Shown in pieces: positions 20,418-41,350 of a DNA stretch of 64,000 nt. Below the pieces are notes generated by a model, which was given only the letters and a program-made list of their open reading frames with translations, had not been told where the DNA came from and searched no databases. Position 1 is the stretch's first letter, and the number at the start of each line of letters is the position of its first letter. Where the stretch lies: NCBI RefSeq assembly GCF_963853765.1, contig NC_088859.1, positions 35,774,001-35,838,000 of the forward strand, written 5' to 3'. The translations under genes were made by a program, and so were the position numbers. Source of the stretch: Magallana gigas. Lineage: Eukaryota.

Positions 20418-23400
20418 ATGGGAGTAACTGTCCAACAAGTAACTCCTGGAAATGGTAGAAGACAACAGTTCTTTCAGTTGATTTTCTAAGATTGAAATAC
20501 GCGTCGCTTCGCTTCCATTTTGTAAGATTACTGCCGTCATTGTTAAAAATTCGCATTCAGACCGAGTTTTCTTTACACTATTTCAGAATTTATCTTTTAA
20601 CTCCCATGTGTATTTATTGTGGTGCACCGTATTGAAATTATTTAAGATCATTATTTGAAATTTATTGCACTTGTAGTATTACCATCTTCTTAATTGAGTG
20701 CTTAATTCTTATTCCTTTATCAACTGATCGATGTGGTACTTGGTCTCAACTGCCGGTATGCACCAGAACTGGTTTAATATAGATTACAGTGTAATTTGTG
20801 GGGTAAATTGAACCATGTTGCATTATACAGATAGTCAAAATACACGATAATTGTTTTGATATGAACTGGGTATATATTATAACCAATATTTTTGCTTGGT
20901 AGAAGAGGGCTCACCGAGCATCCATCCCCAAATATTGTTTATAGTTAGAGAAAGTATATGCACTCCAAACTGGGTGAAGTGAAAATGCTTAAATGTCCAA
21001 TCTTGATAACAAAGCAAAAATTCCTTATACTCTACTTTGCCAAATTGCCCATGAAACTTAATACTTCTATAATCATGTCAAGACAAATTAAGTCAGATAC
21101 TTAATGTCACTTTTACTGTAGAAGCACAAATATTCGTTGGGTTAAAATTTCGTTGTTTTTTTAACCAAATAAAATTTCATTTGGATTTAATTTCGTCATA
21201 TCTTAATCTTTAAAATGCATCATATATCAACCCTGTAGTTAGGAATACTTGGGTTAAAAATTTGTCGTAAATTTAATTTTGATGATTTATACTTCCAATG
21301 AAAAATAACGAAATTAAATCCTCAATGAATATTTCTGCTTCTACAGTATTTAATTAGATACCGTATGTTTACATGGGCATTTTTATCACATATAAAATTT
21401 TGACAGGAAAAAGAAAAATGCTTTACTATAACTAAAATTTGTTGTGTTTTTTTTGTTCAACAGGACAGACTTACCCAAAGAAAGGCCAAGTGGTAGTAGT
21501 ACATTACACAGGTAAAGAACTAAAGAAATTGAAAACTCTTTGGCATCAATGTCAGGAAAAGGGCTGGGGCACTTTCTTCACTTGCTACTGTTTAATATTA
21601 TTTAATAAGAGCATAAAAGAAATACTTTAATAATGATAAAAGAAAGTTTTCTTTTTGTTCTCTGCAATTACTGGTACTTGTATTACAGATGCAGAGGAAT
21701 TATTTTTTTTCCACATTTATAGGAACCCTAGAGAATGGACAGAAATTTGACTCTTCAAGAGATAGAGGGCAGCCATTTAAGTTTAGGATGGGTCACCAAG
21801 AAGTCATTAAAGGCTGGGACGAAGGAGTAGCAAAGGTCGGTCTCAGAGTTTTGTGATTTATGCACAATGATCTAGACCCAGGACCATAACTTTTAGACAG
21901 GCTCTCTTGCCAGCAGTATTATGTTAAATTTGTGACATACATGTATTGTTACATTTCATACCTACATGTACATGTATTATGATCCTCAAAAGTGAGACTT
22001 GAGATCAATTTAAACCTTTAATTTTAACTTTTGTGTCCCTAGACCTTGTTTTGCTTCTTTCAAAATTCACAAGAATGTATTTAGTTAATGCCATAAAATG
22101 GAAATGTTATCTTTTTTGTGTAGTTCTTTTAAGAAACTCTGATTAAATCCCTTTACATGTATTATGGTAAATTTTTTAAACTTATATAATTTGATTTTTT
22201 TTTTTCAAGATGAGTATTGGAGAGCGTGCCATTTTAACATGTAGTCCAGATTATGGATATGGAGCTATTGGTTACCCAGGAGTATATCCTTTTAATTGAA
22301 AACGGTTTCTTTTTCTTTTTAGATATACGGTTTAAAGCATATTATATTTGGTGCATACAATATTTGGTAGAAAATGATTTCTCAAGAAATTTTGCATGGA
22401 TTTGATTTGATGTAGGTATTTCTCGATGTTGTACCTGTTCTTATACAGATATGATTGGCATTTAGTGTATACTTGATGAACTTGATTTAGCAGAAGTTGC
22501 TTTCTGTCAAACACACTGAAAGAAATAAACAACCAAATGTAGTTTTTAAAGTATTCTTATGTTATTTGATATTTCTAAAAAAAAAAAATCAACCCAATAT
22601 GAAAATTAGATCCATTTTAACAAGACCTTGGACTTTCAGTAGGATGTAACGATCTATTTCTTGCGTCAAAACAAGTTAAAATGACGCTGGTTTCAAGCAA
22701 AATATACACTGATTGTGTAGTCTTTGCTCTAAAGCCAGACACACCCTGCTGATTTCAGAGAGCCTTGGCTGAGTGGCCTACAATGAAACAGACAGGCCTA
22801 CATATCATTGCTGTTTGACTCAGCTACATAAAGTCCAAGCTCTTGTTAAAATGGTTCTACAAGTTCAAAAGGTCAATTCTTCAATTCAGTTACCAGTACA
22901 TTAACAAAGGTTTAAAAACTAATTAAAGCTATTGGTGAAAAAAAGTAACTTGTTTAATGAACAAATACTTTATTATTGACAAATGATTAAAGTTTGGAAA
23001 AAGTAATGTATTTATTAATTCATTCATAATTCTTTAGTTATTTAAACAATAAGATGCTTTCTCCGGTGATTCAAGCGGGATATGAAGGTGGCAACATTGC
23101 AGAAAAAATACCTGTAAATTTTTTCTGCAATGTTCGGTTCCTTCATAACCCACATGATTCATCAAAGAAGCATTTTATTGTTTATTTTAACATCTCTCTT
23201 TTAACTAATTAATAAATTGATCATAAAAAGTAAGAAAAATTCACTATAAAATTACTGTTAATGTACTTAAGTATGTAAGCTAAGAGAAACAGCCAAATCG
23301 TCGCCTCTGAGACTTTGAGTCTGACATCATCATGATAATTTCATGCAGTCCGTGATTTTTCTTAGGTTGCTGTAGGTTACAACCACTCGATAAACAGGGC

Positions 23401-23665
23401 TTGTCGATTTCAGTACGCTGTAGATTTCGAACAATTGATAAATGGGGCATGTAGATTTCAGTCTGGCTGTTTCTATAGAGCTATGAATTAACTATGAGTT
23501 TCGGTAAGAAATAGAGGGAATCATACTTGGTAGATGTAAATATATTACAGTAATGTTAAATTATTTAATCATTCATATGCATTGCTGTTATCTTCCTTAA
23601 TGTTGAATACTATCCCACCAAATGCAAAGCTAATATTTGATGTGGAGCTGTTGAAATTGGAATGA
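20418..23665 (+). CDS. FKBP1A: FKBP12-type peptidyl-prolyl isomerase, cytosolic, 108 aa (paralog 1)
   Basis: Exons 20418-20454, 21464-21511, 21723-21835, 22210-22283, 23611-23665 give [108 protein letters not shown]. Last intron is AT-AC. Confidence 0.93.
21116..21346. mobile_element. TA-flanked MITE in FKBP-1 intron 1
   Basis: TA-CTGTAGAAGCACAAATATT versus AATATTTCTGCTTCTACAG-TA. Confidence 0.7.
22284..23610 (+). other. U12-type AT-AC intron (FKBP paralog 1)
   Basis: Donor ATATCCTTTT, branch TTCCTTAAT ~10 nt before a terminal AC; removal restores GVIPPNA. Confidence 0.92.
23038..23545. repeat. Interspersed repeat with long terminal hairpin (copy 1; copy 2 at ~58932-59481)
   Basis: ~500 bp aligns by eye with 58932-59481 (e.g. 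CTTTGAGTCTGACATCATCATGAT; CTATAGAGCTATGAATTAACTAT). Confidence 0.8.
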
Positions 23666-39309: not shown

Positions 39310-41350
39310 ATGGGTGTAGAAAAGCAAGTTTTGGCACAAGGAGACGGTAGGAATAATTCTTAATGTATCAATGTTTTAGTTTTAGGAAGAGGTGGAGTGA
39401 TTTAAACCGGGTTAATGCCAGCCCCACGGCACGTGTTTTTTGTGCCGTTTACTTTTTGTCGTCGACTCACAAGACTGTCCAAAACCTTACAACTATGTAA
39501 AGTTTCTTTATATATTAGTGAGGATTATGTATGTCTTTTGTTAATTTTATTCAACTTGGACTAGAATTGTCTTCCCTTGTATATAAGCATACCTACATGG
39601 AGAGATCCCTTTTTTCCGGTATTTAATTTTAAAAGTGTTCGAATTCCCCTTTTAAGTAAAAATGGTATATTCTCTTAAGATGGACTTTATTTCTTTATTA
39701 CGTACTTTTTAGAATTAACTTTAATTATAATTTTAGTATACATCACACATGCCATGAATTAAAGCTCAAAGTTTCTTTCAGAAAGTTTCTAACTTCCAAT
39801 TTTTCTTAATTATTTCATATTTAGAAAGCATAATTTTTTATGTAGCAAATTTTTCAAACTTAAAATGCAGGGTTTGTTTTATTATAGCTGCTGCTTAAGC
39901 CTATATACATATTATAAAAGAATTTTGAAACAATACATGTATGTGTCTGTCTATACGATTATAGCGGCGGAGGAAATGTACAATATTATGTATAGCATTG
40001 CATGTACTTGCTGGCATGCCTACTAGAAGTGGGATTTCCTCCACTTTGTGGTAAAGCTTATTTTGTTAGATGTCATGATATTTTAAATTATGAATTTTGT
40101 TTTAAAGGTAAGACTTTCCCCACAAAAGGACAGACAGTTGTTGTGCACTATACAGGTATTTTCTATGTTTTTCTCTCTCTCCTGTACCATAAATTAAACA
40201 TGTTTCTGATTCTACATTTGTAAAAAGAACTTACCATCTTATTAGTTTCAATGGAAATTTATGAAAATTCTACATTATATTCTTGTTCTTGTCATTGTAA
40301 ACAATTTTAATTAATGCTTACCATTCAGCCCACATTTAAAGAATTTGAAAAATATGTTAAAAATTACCTTTACTACAAAAAAATATATACACATTGGAAA
40401 ATAAACAAACATCCTTTTCATTTAGGAACTCTAACTGATGGAAAGAAATTTGATTCCTCAAAAGACAGGGGCAAGCCTTTTGAATTCAAAATTGGGATGA
40501 GCCAAGTCATTAAAGGTAAGTTTTAAAACACACATTTACTGGGTAATACCGTGTTACGCAGAAATGAATACAAGTAAATTGATAAATACATGCATTTTCT
40601 TATTGCTGTCTTTGGTTAATGCCAAAGCTATATTCTTTTGATGGTGGTGATAATAATTCTATGATTTTTTTTTCATTGGCAGGATGGGATGAAGGTGTCA
40701 TGACAGTATGTATTCAAACTTTTAATATGGATCTTAAATTTTACTGTGTAACATTTACTAACTTTAATATTCTGCCTTATCATAAAGTATTGCAACTAAA
40801 TAATGCAGAAAGCACTGGTAGCTATGATAATTCTTATTGTTGGAAAATATTAAACAAATTAAACAAGAATGTAATTAAATCAATTTACTTTCTTTATTAT
40901 AGATGAGTGTTGGTGAGAAAGCTATTTTGACATGCTCCCCCGACTATGCCTATGGACCAAGTGGGGTTGGCGGAGTATATCCTTTTATAACTAAAACTAA
41001 AATTCATGAATTATTCTGATAGATAAGTTTAAATTGATTCCATTATCAAGATGCTGTGGTTTTGAAATCTGCTTACCGGTATATGTTCCTTCAGAAGGTA
41101 AATGAAAAAAAATTACAGGAACATTCCTGATATAGAAGTTCAAATTGATACGTTTTCAGAAGTTTGCTTATGAGTCCCTCTAAAAGGTGAAATATACACA
41201 ACAATATATATTTTGAAATGCATTTGAACCTGTAAAGTTTTTCACATTGTGCATTGATCATGTGCATCGTCAGCAATTTCCTTAACACTGAGCACTATAC
41301 CACCCAATGCCACTCTAATCTTCGAGGTGGAACTTTTAGGACTGAAGTAG
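39310..41350 (+). CDS. FKBP1A: FKBP12-type peptidyl-prolyl isomerase, cytosolic, 108 aa (paralog 4)
   Basis: Exons 39310-39346, 40108-40155, 40426-40515, 40683-40705, 40903-40976, 41296-41350 give [108 protein letters not shown]. Confidence 0.93.
40977..41295 (+). other. U12-type AT-AC intron (paralog 4)
   Basis: ATATCCTTTT ... TTTCCTTAAC-ACTGAGCAC; perfect U12 consensus; restores GVIPPNA. Confidence 0.95.

What the first reader, a model, noticed from the sequence alone, without database searches (positions are those of the whole stretch)
22284..41295. A minor-spliceosome AT-AC intron retained at the same codon in all four FKBP paralogs
Seen: each gene has ATATCCTTT immediately after a 74-nt exon (22284, 32368, 36070, 40977) and a TCCTT(A/G)A branch ~10 nt before the acceptor. 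Intron lengths differ widely (1327, 119, ~126, 319 nt). Known: U12 introns are rare, often rate-limiting, and tend to be lost or converted to U2 after duplication; as I recall, human FKBP1A has no intron at this position. Inference: the whole cluster is under shared minor-spliceosome control, since intron retention truncates the C-terminal beta-strand carrying the F99 equivalent.
Basis: partly seen in the sequence, partly recalled or inferred. Interest (0 to 1): 0.72.

Follow-up and report, generated by a model that had tools for sequence, protein, structure and literature searches.

The report
Conserved U12 intron in oyster FKBPs
Four neighbouring FKBP12-type genes of an oyster all keep the same rare minor-spliceosome intron, and RNA shows it is removed exactly as predicted. 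It is an old intron inherited from the bilaterian ancestor, so this is a well-documented ordinary case and not evidence of a new control system.

Summary
RNA confirms all four junctions. Genes 1, 2 and 4 splice AT..AC. Gene 3 splices AT..AA (36070-36195), a known non-canonical U12 subtype, which adds three residues (NPP). No GT-AG alternative was seen. The genome encodes U11, U12, U4atac and U6atac.

The same phase-2 AT-AC intron is present in FKBP12 orthologues of mussel, starfish, sea cucumber, tick and damselfly. It is absent in a priapulid and a prawn. It is therefore an ancestral bilaterian minor intron that the tandem copies inherited.

All four genes must depend on the minor spliceosome. 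Regulatory "shared control" has no support: unspliced RNA over gene 4's U12 intron is about 1-2% in two RNA contig sets, similar to a U2 intron of the same gene.

RefSeq already models genes 1 and 2 correctly. One UniProt model shifts the junction by 2 nt, and one Saccostrea model reads into the intron. The assembly gap (29275-29420) is intergenic.

Other notes of this scan list further U12 introns elsewhere in this genome.

The parts
20418..23665 (+). Gene 1, cytosolic FKBP12 type, 108 aa. CDS exons 20418-20454, 21464-21511, 21723-21835, 22210-22283, 23611-23665.
   Evidence: The model translates to exactly P0009:19-126 and to P0210, a RefSeq oyster FKBP1A. RNA contig L004 is colinear with the window.
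22284..23610 (+). Gene 1 U12-type intron, AT..AC, 1327 nt, phase 2. Donor ATATCCTTT at 22284-22292; branch box TTCCTTAA at 23593-23600.
   Evidence: RNA contig L004 reads ..ccaggagt|tatcccacc.., joining 22283 to 23611 with no positional ambiguity. The same junction peptide ends Logan proteins seen on more than 70 contigs.
29275..29420 (.). Assembly gap (N), intergenic between gene 1 and gene 2.
   Evidence: RNA contigs end at 23980 and begin at 29854. The gap was not filled.
30309..32586 (+). Gene 2, FKBP12-derived paralog with a hydrophobic N-terminus, 139 aa. CDS exons 30309-30402, 30842-30889, 31241-31321, 31453-31475, 32294-32367, 32487-32586.
   Evidence: The model equals P0230, a RefSeq protein. 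RNA contig L005 is colinear with the window.
32368..32486 (+). Gene 2 U12-type intron, AT..AC, 119 nt, phase 2. Donor at 32368-32376; branch box ATCCTTGA at 32469-32476.
   Evidence: L005 positions 698-771 match 32294-32367 and positions 772-962 match 32487-32677, abutting with no overlap. Protein P0125 reads ..GKPGL|IPPNTP...
33784..36892 (+). Gene 3, FKBP domain with a hydrophobic N-terminus and a roughly 215-aa Gln/Ala/Gly-rich tail, 338 aa. CDS exons 33784-33871, 34751-34798, 35718-35804, 35894-35916, 35996-36069, 36196-36892.
   Evidence: Model. RNA supports exons 3-6. The first two junctions are inferred from GT-AG sites and reading frame only.
36070..36195 (+). Gene 3 U12-type intron, AT..AA, 126 nt, phase 2. 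Donor at 36070-36078; branch box TTCCTTAT at 36178-36185. The AC at 36198-36199 is out of frame and no joint using it was listed.
   Evidence: The joint 36069->36196, 'skips 126, AT..AA', is carried by two independent RNA contig sets (depth 12.5 and 41) and 1 raw read. It keeps the frame open to 36892.
39310..41350 (+). Gene 4, cytosolic FKBP12 type, 108 aa. CDS exons 39310-39346, 40108-40155, 40426-40515, 40683-40705, 40903-40976, 41296-41350.
   Evidence: Model. All five junctions are seen in RNA.
40977..41295 (+). Gene 4 U12-type intron, AT..AC, 319 nt, phase 2. Donor at 40977-40985; branch box TTCCTTAA at 41278-41285.
   Evidence: The joint 40976->41296, 'skips 319, AT..AC', is seen in 8 and 10 raw polyA RNA reads with 8 start places each, in contigs of depth 425 and 960, with positional ambiguity 0.

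Best explanation
These are four tandem duplicates of an FKBP12 (FKBP1) gene in an oyster. Each has inherited an ancient U12-type (minor-spliceosome) intron at the same phase-2 position, in the codon just before the IPP motif, and each splices it constitutively. Inferred mechanism, from established knowledge of U12 splicing: U11 and later U6atac pair with the invariant donor /ATATCCTTT, and U12 pairs with the TTCCTTRA-type branch box. The 3' cut is set by distance from the branch box, 10 nt here, and not by a strict dinucleotide. That is why gene 3 can use AA where the others use AC. Gene 3's cut lies 9 nt upstream of the aligned position and adds three residues (NPP). All four proteins therefore need the minor spliceosome to obtain their last beta-strand. 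Nothing indicates that this dependence is used as a regulatory switch.
For: Motifs and their positions are established. Exact RNA junctions are shown for all four genes: gene 1, gene 2, genes 3 and 4. All other introns of these genes are GT..AG. The paralogs are only 42-68% identical in protein, and the 74-nt exons match at 33-49 of 74 nt. Intron interiors are mostly near random identity (7-19 of 40). Yet the 9-nt donor is 9/9 in all four and the spacing from box to cut is 10 nt in all four. Full-length U12 (126 bits), U6atac (90), U11 (98) and U4atac (81) are present in the same genome. They carry the expected AGTAAGGAA, AAAGGAGA and AAAAGGG pairing stretches. The same ATATCCTTT...T(T/C)C(C/T)TT(A/G)AC...AC phase-2 intron occurs in FKBP12 orthologues of Mytilus, Acanthaster, Holothuria, Ornithodoros and Hetaerina. 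Other FKBP-domain genes of this genome are continuous across this position. AT-AA is the commonest non-canonical U12 terminus, and AT-AC/AT-AA switching between orthologues is documented (PMC10639083; PMC1557818, Tables 2-3).
Against: Dependence on the minor spliceosome is inferred from sequence and junctions; no perturbation was done. Gene 3's junction rests on two contig sets and a single raw read, and has a 1-nt positional ambiguity. In one raw-read run (X21) the interior of gene 4's U12 intron had depth about 2 against 8 junction reads. That could hint at some retention, but it amounts to only 2-3 reads.
Confidence: 0.92

Rival explanations
1. One reading: the four genes form a unit whose output is tuned together by limiting minor-spliceosome activity (for example labile U6atac), through regulated retention of this intron under stress.
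For: All four share the dependence. Retention would give truncated proteins lacking the last strand. One run shows a few reads inside gene 4's U12 intron (X21, depth 1.99 against 8 junction reads).
Against: In the two RNA contig sets, unspliced contigs over gene 4's U12 intron have depth 5-9 against 425-1016 for the spliced form, about 1-2%. The U2-type intron 1 of the same gene shows 3-12.5, so there is no excess. Run X22 shows 0 depth in the intron interior with 10 junction reads. The intron is ancestral and also present in single-copy orthologues, so its presence needs no cluster-level explanation. The four genes encode different products, two cytosolic-type and two with hydrophobic N-termini.
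Confidence: 0.1
2. These are U2-dependent AT-AC (type II) introns removed by the major spliceosome.
For: The termini are AT..AC, and such U2-type introns exist (PMC1557818).
Against: The donor is the U12 consensus ATATCCTTT, not an ATAAGT-like U1-matching site. A U12 branch box sits 10 nt from the cut, with no pyrimidine tract between them. Both elements are conserved across phyla.
Confidence: 0.03
3. The motifs are chance matches and the real introns use nearby GT-AG sites; or the four introns were gained independently.
For: Genes 1 and 4 have a GT 2 nt upstream of the AT, and one public model (P0219) uses that GT.
Against: RNA contigs and reads give the AT boundaries with no ambiguity in genes 1, 2 and 4. 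The GT..AT model changes residue 91 to T, which the RNA contradicts. No alternative joints were listed. The identical position, phase and motifs in distant phyla show inheritance.
Confidence: 0.01

Closest known systems
U12-type AT-AC introns of the minor spliceosome (U11/U12, U4atac/U6atac)
   Same: [quoted passage not shown]
   Different: Nothing in kind. This particular intron, in FKBP12, is not named in any paper the library search found. By my recollection, untested here, it is missing from human FKBP1A.
Minor introns kept at homologous positions in paralogous gene families. Voltage-gated Na+/Ca2+ channels and MAP kinases are examples from my own knowledge. The general statement is in PMC10639083.
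   Same: Duplicates inherit the U12 intron and keep it at the same codon while the proteins diverge.
   Different: Here the duplicates are a compact local tandem array, and two copies have acquired hydrophobic N-termini. One of those also has a Gln-rich tail.
Non-canonical AT-AA U12 introns, for example MSH3, which is AT-AA in human and AT-AC in mouse (PMC1557818, Table 3). AT-AA is the commonest non-canonical subtype (PMC10639083).
   Same: Gene 3 keeps the AT donor and the branch box but ends in AA. Its paralogs end in AC.
   Different: In gene 3 the cut is also displaced 9 nt relative to the protein alignment, which adds NPP. The nearby AC has become out of frame.
Minor introns as 'molecular switches' limited by unstable U6atac (Younis et al. 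2013, from my own knowledge)
   Same: Any U12-containing gene could in principle respond to the level of minor spliceosome.
   Different: No sign of slow or regulated splicing was found here. This is a resemblance in possibility only.

Membership tests
U12-type (minor-spliceosome) intron | 5' splice site matching /RTATCCTTT | tested here: met
   ATATCCTTT is 9/9 in all four genes and in six orthologous loci.
U12-type (minor-spliceosome) intron | Branch box TTCCTTRAY close to the 3' end (about 10-15 nt), with no pyrimidine tract | tested here: met
   The boxes are TTCCTTAA, ATCCTTGA, TTCCTTAT and TTCCTTAA, each followed by exactly 10 nt. Gene 3's box departs from consensus at one position (T in place of the second purine).
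U12-type (minor-spliceosome) intron | Termini AT-AC or GT-AG, or a documented non-canonical pair, shown by RNA | tested here: met
   AT..AC in genes 1, 2 and 4, and AT..AA in gene 3, by RNA contigs and reads. AT-AA is documented in PMC1557818 and PMC10639083.
U12-type (minor-spliceosome) intron | The organism has the minor snRNAs | tested here: met
   U12, U6atac, U11 and U4atac are all above Rfam's cut-offs in the same genome. Their pairing stretches are present.
U12-type (minor-spliceosome) intron | Splicing depends on U11/U12/U6atac | not testable with these tools
   Needs knock-down or compensatory-mutation experiments.
FKBP12 (FKBP1) subfamily, FKBP_C domain | Single FKBP_C domain of about 108 aa with high identity to FKBP12 of other animals | tested here: met
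   Gene 1 is 73-79% identical over its full length to named animal FKBP12s, PF00254. It is identical to a RefSeq oyster FKBP1A. Gene 4 is 68% identical to gene 1. Genes 2 and 3 are 42-49% identical to the other paralogs and to each other, and share the positions of the other introns.
Regulated intron-retention switch | Retention clearly above that of neighbouring U2 introns, and changing with condition | tested here: inconclusive
   For gene 4, about 1-2% of RNA is unspliced in two contig sets, similar to U2 intron 1. The two raw runs disagree, on very few reads. Conditions were not compared.

The most novel reading that the evidence does not exclude
The oyster FKBP12 array is co-regulated through its shared minor intron. 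Under stress or in particular tissues, minor-spliceosome activity would gate production of the two cytosolic-type and the two signal-bearing FKBPs together. Gene 3's AA/AC choice (AA in frame, AC out of frame) would add a second, splice-site-level on/off step.
Probability: 0.08. Interest if true: 0.55.

Novelty: new member of a known kind. Interest (0 to 1): 0.25.

Why it matters
It gives a clean, RNA-verified example of three established points. A minor intron can persist from the bilaterian ancestor. It can be copied intact through tandem duplication into strongly diverged paralogs. The U12 3' cut follows branch-site distance, so AC can become AA and shift the coding boundary by three codons. 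In practice it also flags a source of annotation error: one public model moves the junction 2 nt to obtain a GT, and another reads into the intron. It does not reveal a new mechanism.

Tried and rejected
1. The look-up of sequencing runs was busy three times before it answered.
2. Only one read-laying run of at most 6000 letters was allowed, so only genes 3 and 4 were laid. Genes 1 and 2 were checked through Logan RNA contigs instead.
3. The look-up of a cnidarian orthologue (P0086) found no record. Age beyond Bilateria is therefore untested.
4. No vertebrate locus was examined, so the claim about human FKBP1A rests on recollection only.
5. Paper searches for FKBP together with U12/minor intron/AT-AC, and for U12 in oysters, found nothing specific. 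The insect U12 paper does not mention FKBP and has no held supplements.
6. A GT-AG reading using the GT 2 nt upstream was rejected, because RNA gives V and not T at residue 91.
7. Use of gene 3's AC at 36198-36199 was rejected, because it is out of frame and no such joint was listed.
8. Independent gain in the four genes was rejected because of the orthologue data.
9. Excess retention was examined from the depths. It was not seen in the contig sets, and the raw-read counts are too small to decide.
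Full report
**Observation.** The 9-mer ATATCCTTT occurs five times in the window, against 1.49 expected, and none of 100 shuffles reaches five. Four of the five lie on the + strand at 22284, 32368, 36070 and 40977. Reading the sequence shows that each follows a 74-nt exon encoding MS.G....(L/V/I)..(S/T).D.(G/A)YG......, the FKBP12 segment before the IPP motif. Each is followed, near a candidate acceptor, by a TTCCTTRA-like box. The window is 34% G+C. Its one assembly gap, 29275-29420, lies between the first and second gene.

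**Gene models.** Exact coding models were derived from frame, GT-AG sites and RNA.
- Gene 1 (20418-23665) encodes a 108-aa FKBP12.
- Gene 2 (30309-32586) encodes 139 aa with a hydrophobic N-terminus.
- Gene 3 (33784-36892) encodes 338 aa, with a hydrophobic N-terminus and a long Gln/Ala/Gly-rich tail.
- Gene 4 (39310-41350) encodes a second 108-aa FKBP12.

All share phase-1 introns after GDG and after HYT(G), a phase-0 intron before the 74-nt exon, and the phase-2 intron in question. Genes 2-4 have an extra phase-1 intron that leaves a 23-nt exon (WDEGV..); gene 1 lacks it. The proteins are 42-68% identical and the 74-nt exons match at 33-49 of 74 nt. Intron interiors are mostly near random identity, 7-19 of 40. 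Against that background, the donor is 9/9 identical in all four, and the branch box is followed by exactly 10 nt in all four.

**RNA evidence.**
- Gene 1: a Logan RNA contig (L004, 2282 nt) is colinear with the window across many introns. It reads ..ccaggagt|tatcccacc.., joining 22283 to 23611 with no possible shift. Other Logan proteins with the same junction peptide were seen on more than 70 contigs.
- Gene 2: RNA contig L005 joins 32367 to 32487 exactly.
- Genes 3 and 4: reads and contigs of four RNA runs were laid on 35700-41400.
  - Gene 4's joint 40976->41296 (319 nt, AT..AC) has 8 and 10 raw reads from 8 start places each, and contig depths of 425 and 960, with zero positional ambiguity.
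  - Gene 3's joint 36069->36196 (126 nt, AT..AA) is carried by contigs of two independent studies (depth 12.5 and 41) and by one raw read. It has a 1-nt positional ambiguity, which the ATATCC motif resolves.
- All other joints of genes 3 and 4 are GT..AG, and no alternative joint near the U12 sites was listed.

The one correction is that gene 3 ends in AA. The AC three bases further on (36198-36199) would break the frame.

**Machinery.** The same genome holds one full-length match each to U12 (126 bits), U6atac (90), U11 (98) and U4atac (81), all above Rfam's cut-offs. These carry the stretches that pair with the branch box and the donor. Dependence of the four introns on this machinery is inferred, not shown.

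**Origin.** FKBP12 orthologues were fetched with their introns and the junctions were solved.
- Present: the same phase-2 intron, with ATATCCTTT, a T(T/C)C(C/T)TT(A/G)AC box 10-11 nt from the end, and AC, occurs in two Mytilus assemblies, the starfish Acanthaster, the sea cucumber Holothuria, the tick Ornithodoros and the damselfly Hetaerina. Its length there ranges from 402 to 9518 nt.
- Absent: the exon is continuous in Priapulus and in the prawn Macrobrachium.
- Other FKBP-domain genes of the oyster genome are also continuous across this position.

The intron is therefore at least as old as the last common ancestor of protostomes and deuterostomes. It is specific to the FKBP12 lineage and has been lost cleanly in some lineages. 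The four oyster copies simply inherited it. This removes the need for a special explanation of its retention. The literature agrees. Minor introns often lie in paralogous families, and molluscs and arachnids are relatively rich in them (PMC10639083). AT-AC introns are poorly recognised by the major spliceosome, so they were little affected by class conversion (PMC7367187).

**Gene 3.** AT-AA is the commonest non-canonical U12 terminus (PMC10639083). Orthologues are known to switch between AT-AC and AT-AA, for example MSH3 (PMC1557818, Tables 2-3). In gene 3 the AA lies exactly 10 nt after the box, the same spacing as in the paralogs, whereas the AC lies at 14 nt. Relative to the protein alignment, the cut is 9 nt upstream and adds NPP before IPP. 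This fits the established view that the U12 3' site is chosen by distance from the branch site. The order of events (an insertion at the start of the exon, then a shift of the cut) is my inference.

**Regulation.** Retaining the intron would stop the frame after 4-34 further codons, depending on the gene, and remove the last strand. That is true of any retained intron. In the two RNA contig sets, unspliced contigs over gene 4's U12 intron have depth 5-9 against 425-1016 for the spliced form. The U2-type intron 1 of the same gene has 3-12.5. Raw run X22 shows no depth inside the U12 intron, while X21 shows about 2, which is two or three reads. There is no evidence for slow or regulated splicing. 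The data are too thin to exclude it, and conditions were not compared.

**Annotation.** Gene 1's model is identical to a RefSeq oyster FKBP1A protein, and gene 2's to another RefSeq protein. Correct 108-aa models also exist for several oyster species, so NCBI's pipeline handles the AT-AC junction. Two faulty models turned up. A UniProt-held oyster model has T in place of V at residue 91. That is exactly what a junction moved 2 nt to begin with GT (GT..AT) produces, and the RNA contradicts it. A partial Saccostrea model runs on into the intron (..GVYPLNV).

**The gap.** The N run at 29275-29420 is intergenic, as far as the RNA contigs show. It affects no exon and none of the four introns. It does mean that the physical adjacency of gene 1 to genes 2-4 depends on the scaffold. 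I made no attempt to read or fill it.

**Verdict.** The feature is an ordinary ancestral minor intron in a tandemly duplicated gene. It is new only in that the searched literature does not name it. The regulatory inference is unsupported. Other notes of this scan list further U12 introns elsewhere in this genome and had already raised the AT-AA question for gene 3, which the RNA now settles.

Noticed in passing
window 1558-1566 (- strand), with ORF upstream at about 1567-1700 (-): A fifth ATATCCTTT follows directly after an open frame (..VVNAEFILTGILRQENAAEK) on the minus strand. This is apparently the 3' part of the large FHA/BRCT gene that lies head-to-head with gene 1, so it is a possible further U12 donor. 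Any acceptor was not found and may lie beyond the window's start.
   Followed up: partly
window about 380-1280: About five tandem copies of a unit of roughly 180 nt lie downstream of that possible donor, inside the presumed intron (seen).
   Followed up: no
window 9884-18394 (- strand) and 20190-20455: RNA contig L004 joins the spliced exons of the minus-strand FHA/BRCT gene to the 5' end of gene 1. The two genes are head-to-head about 1.8 kb apart. The contig is either a chimeric assembly or reflects overlapping divergent transcripts. The same FHA/BRCT neighbour lies head-to-head with FKBP12 in Mytilus and Priapulus, so this is conserved synteny.
   Followed up: partly
window 20728-20831: Alternative first exons of gene 1 lie in intron 1. 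Protein P0010 starts [12 protein letters not shown]|RLQCNLWG and then joins exon 2. RefSeq isoforms X2 of two oyster species belong to the same cluster.
   Followed up: partly
window 33784-36892: Gene 3 carries a tail of about 215 aa that is rich in Gln, Ala and Gly. RNA contigs show two in-frame CAA insertions relative to the window (behind 36688 and 36787), that is, length polymorphism of the Gln runs.
   Followed up: partly
window 37610-38373: A strongly covered stretch between genes 3 and 4, read on both strands, with many loose ends at 37612-37615 and odd joints. It looks like a repeat or mobile element transcribed from many copies.
   Followed up: no
L006 15029-15366; L007 10277-10539: In Mytilus, the first 18 codons of the 74-nt exon are repeated in tandem just upstream of the real exon: five copies with a 71-nt period in L006, and three less regularly spaced copies in L007.
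   Followed up: no
window 30413-30470 and 35589-35650: Dinucleotide microsatellites sit directly inside introns of genes 2 and 3: (CA)n, read as HTHTHT in translation, and (TA/TATA)n. RNA-run-derived proteins differ in the (CA)n length.
   Followed up: no
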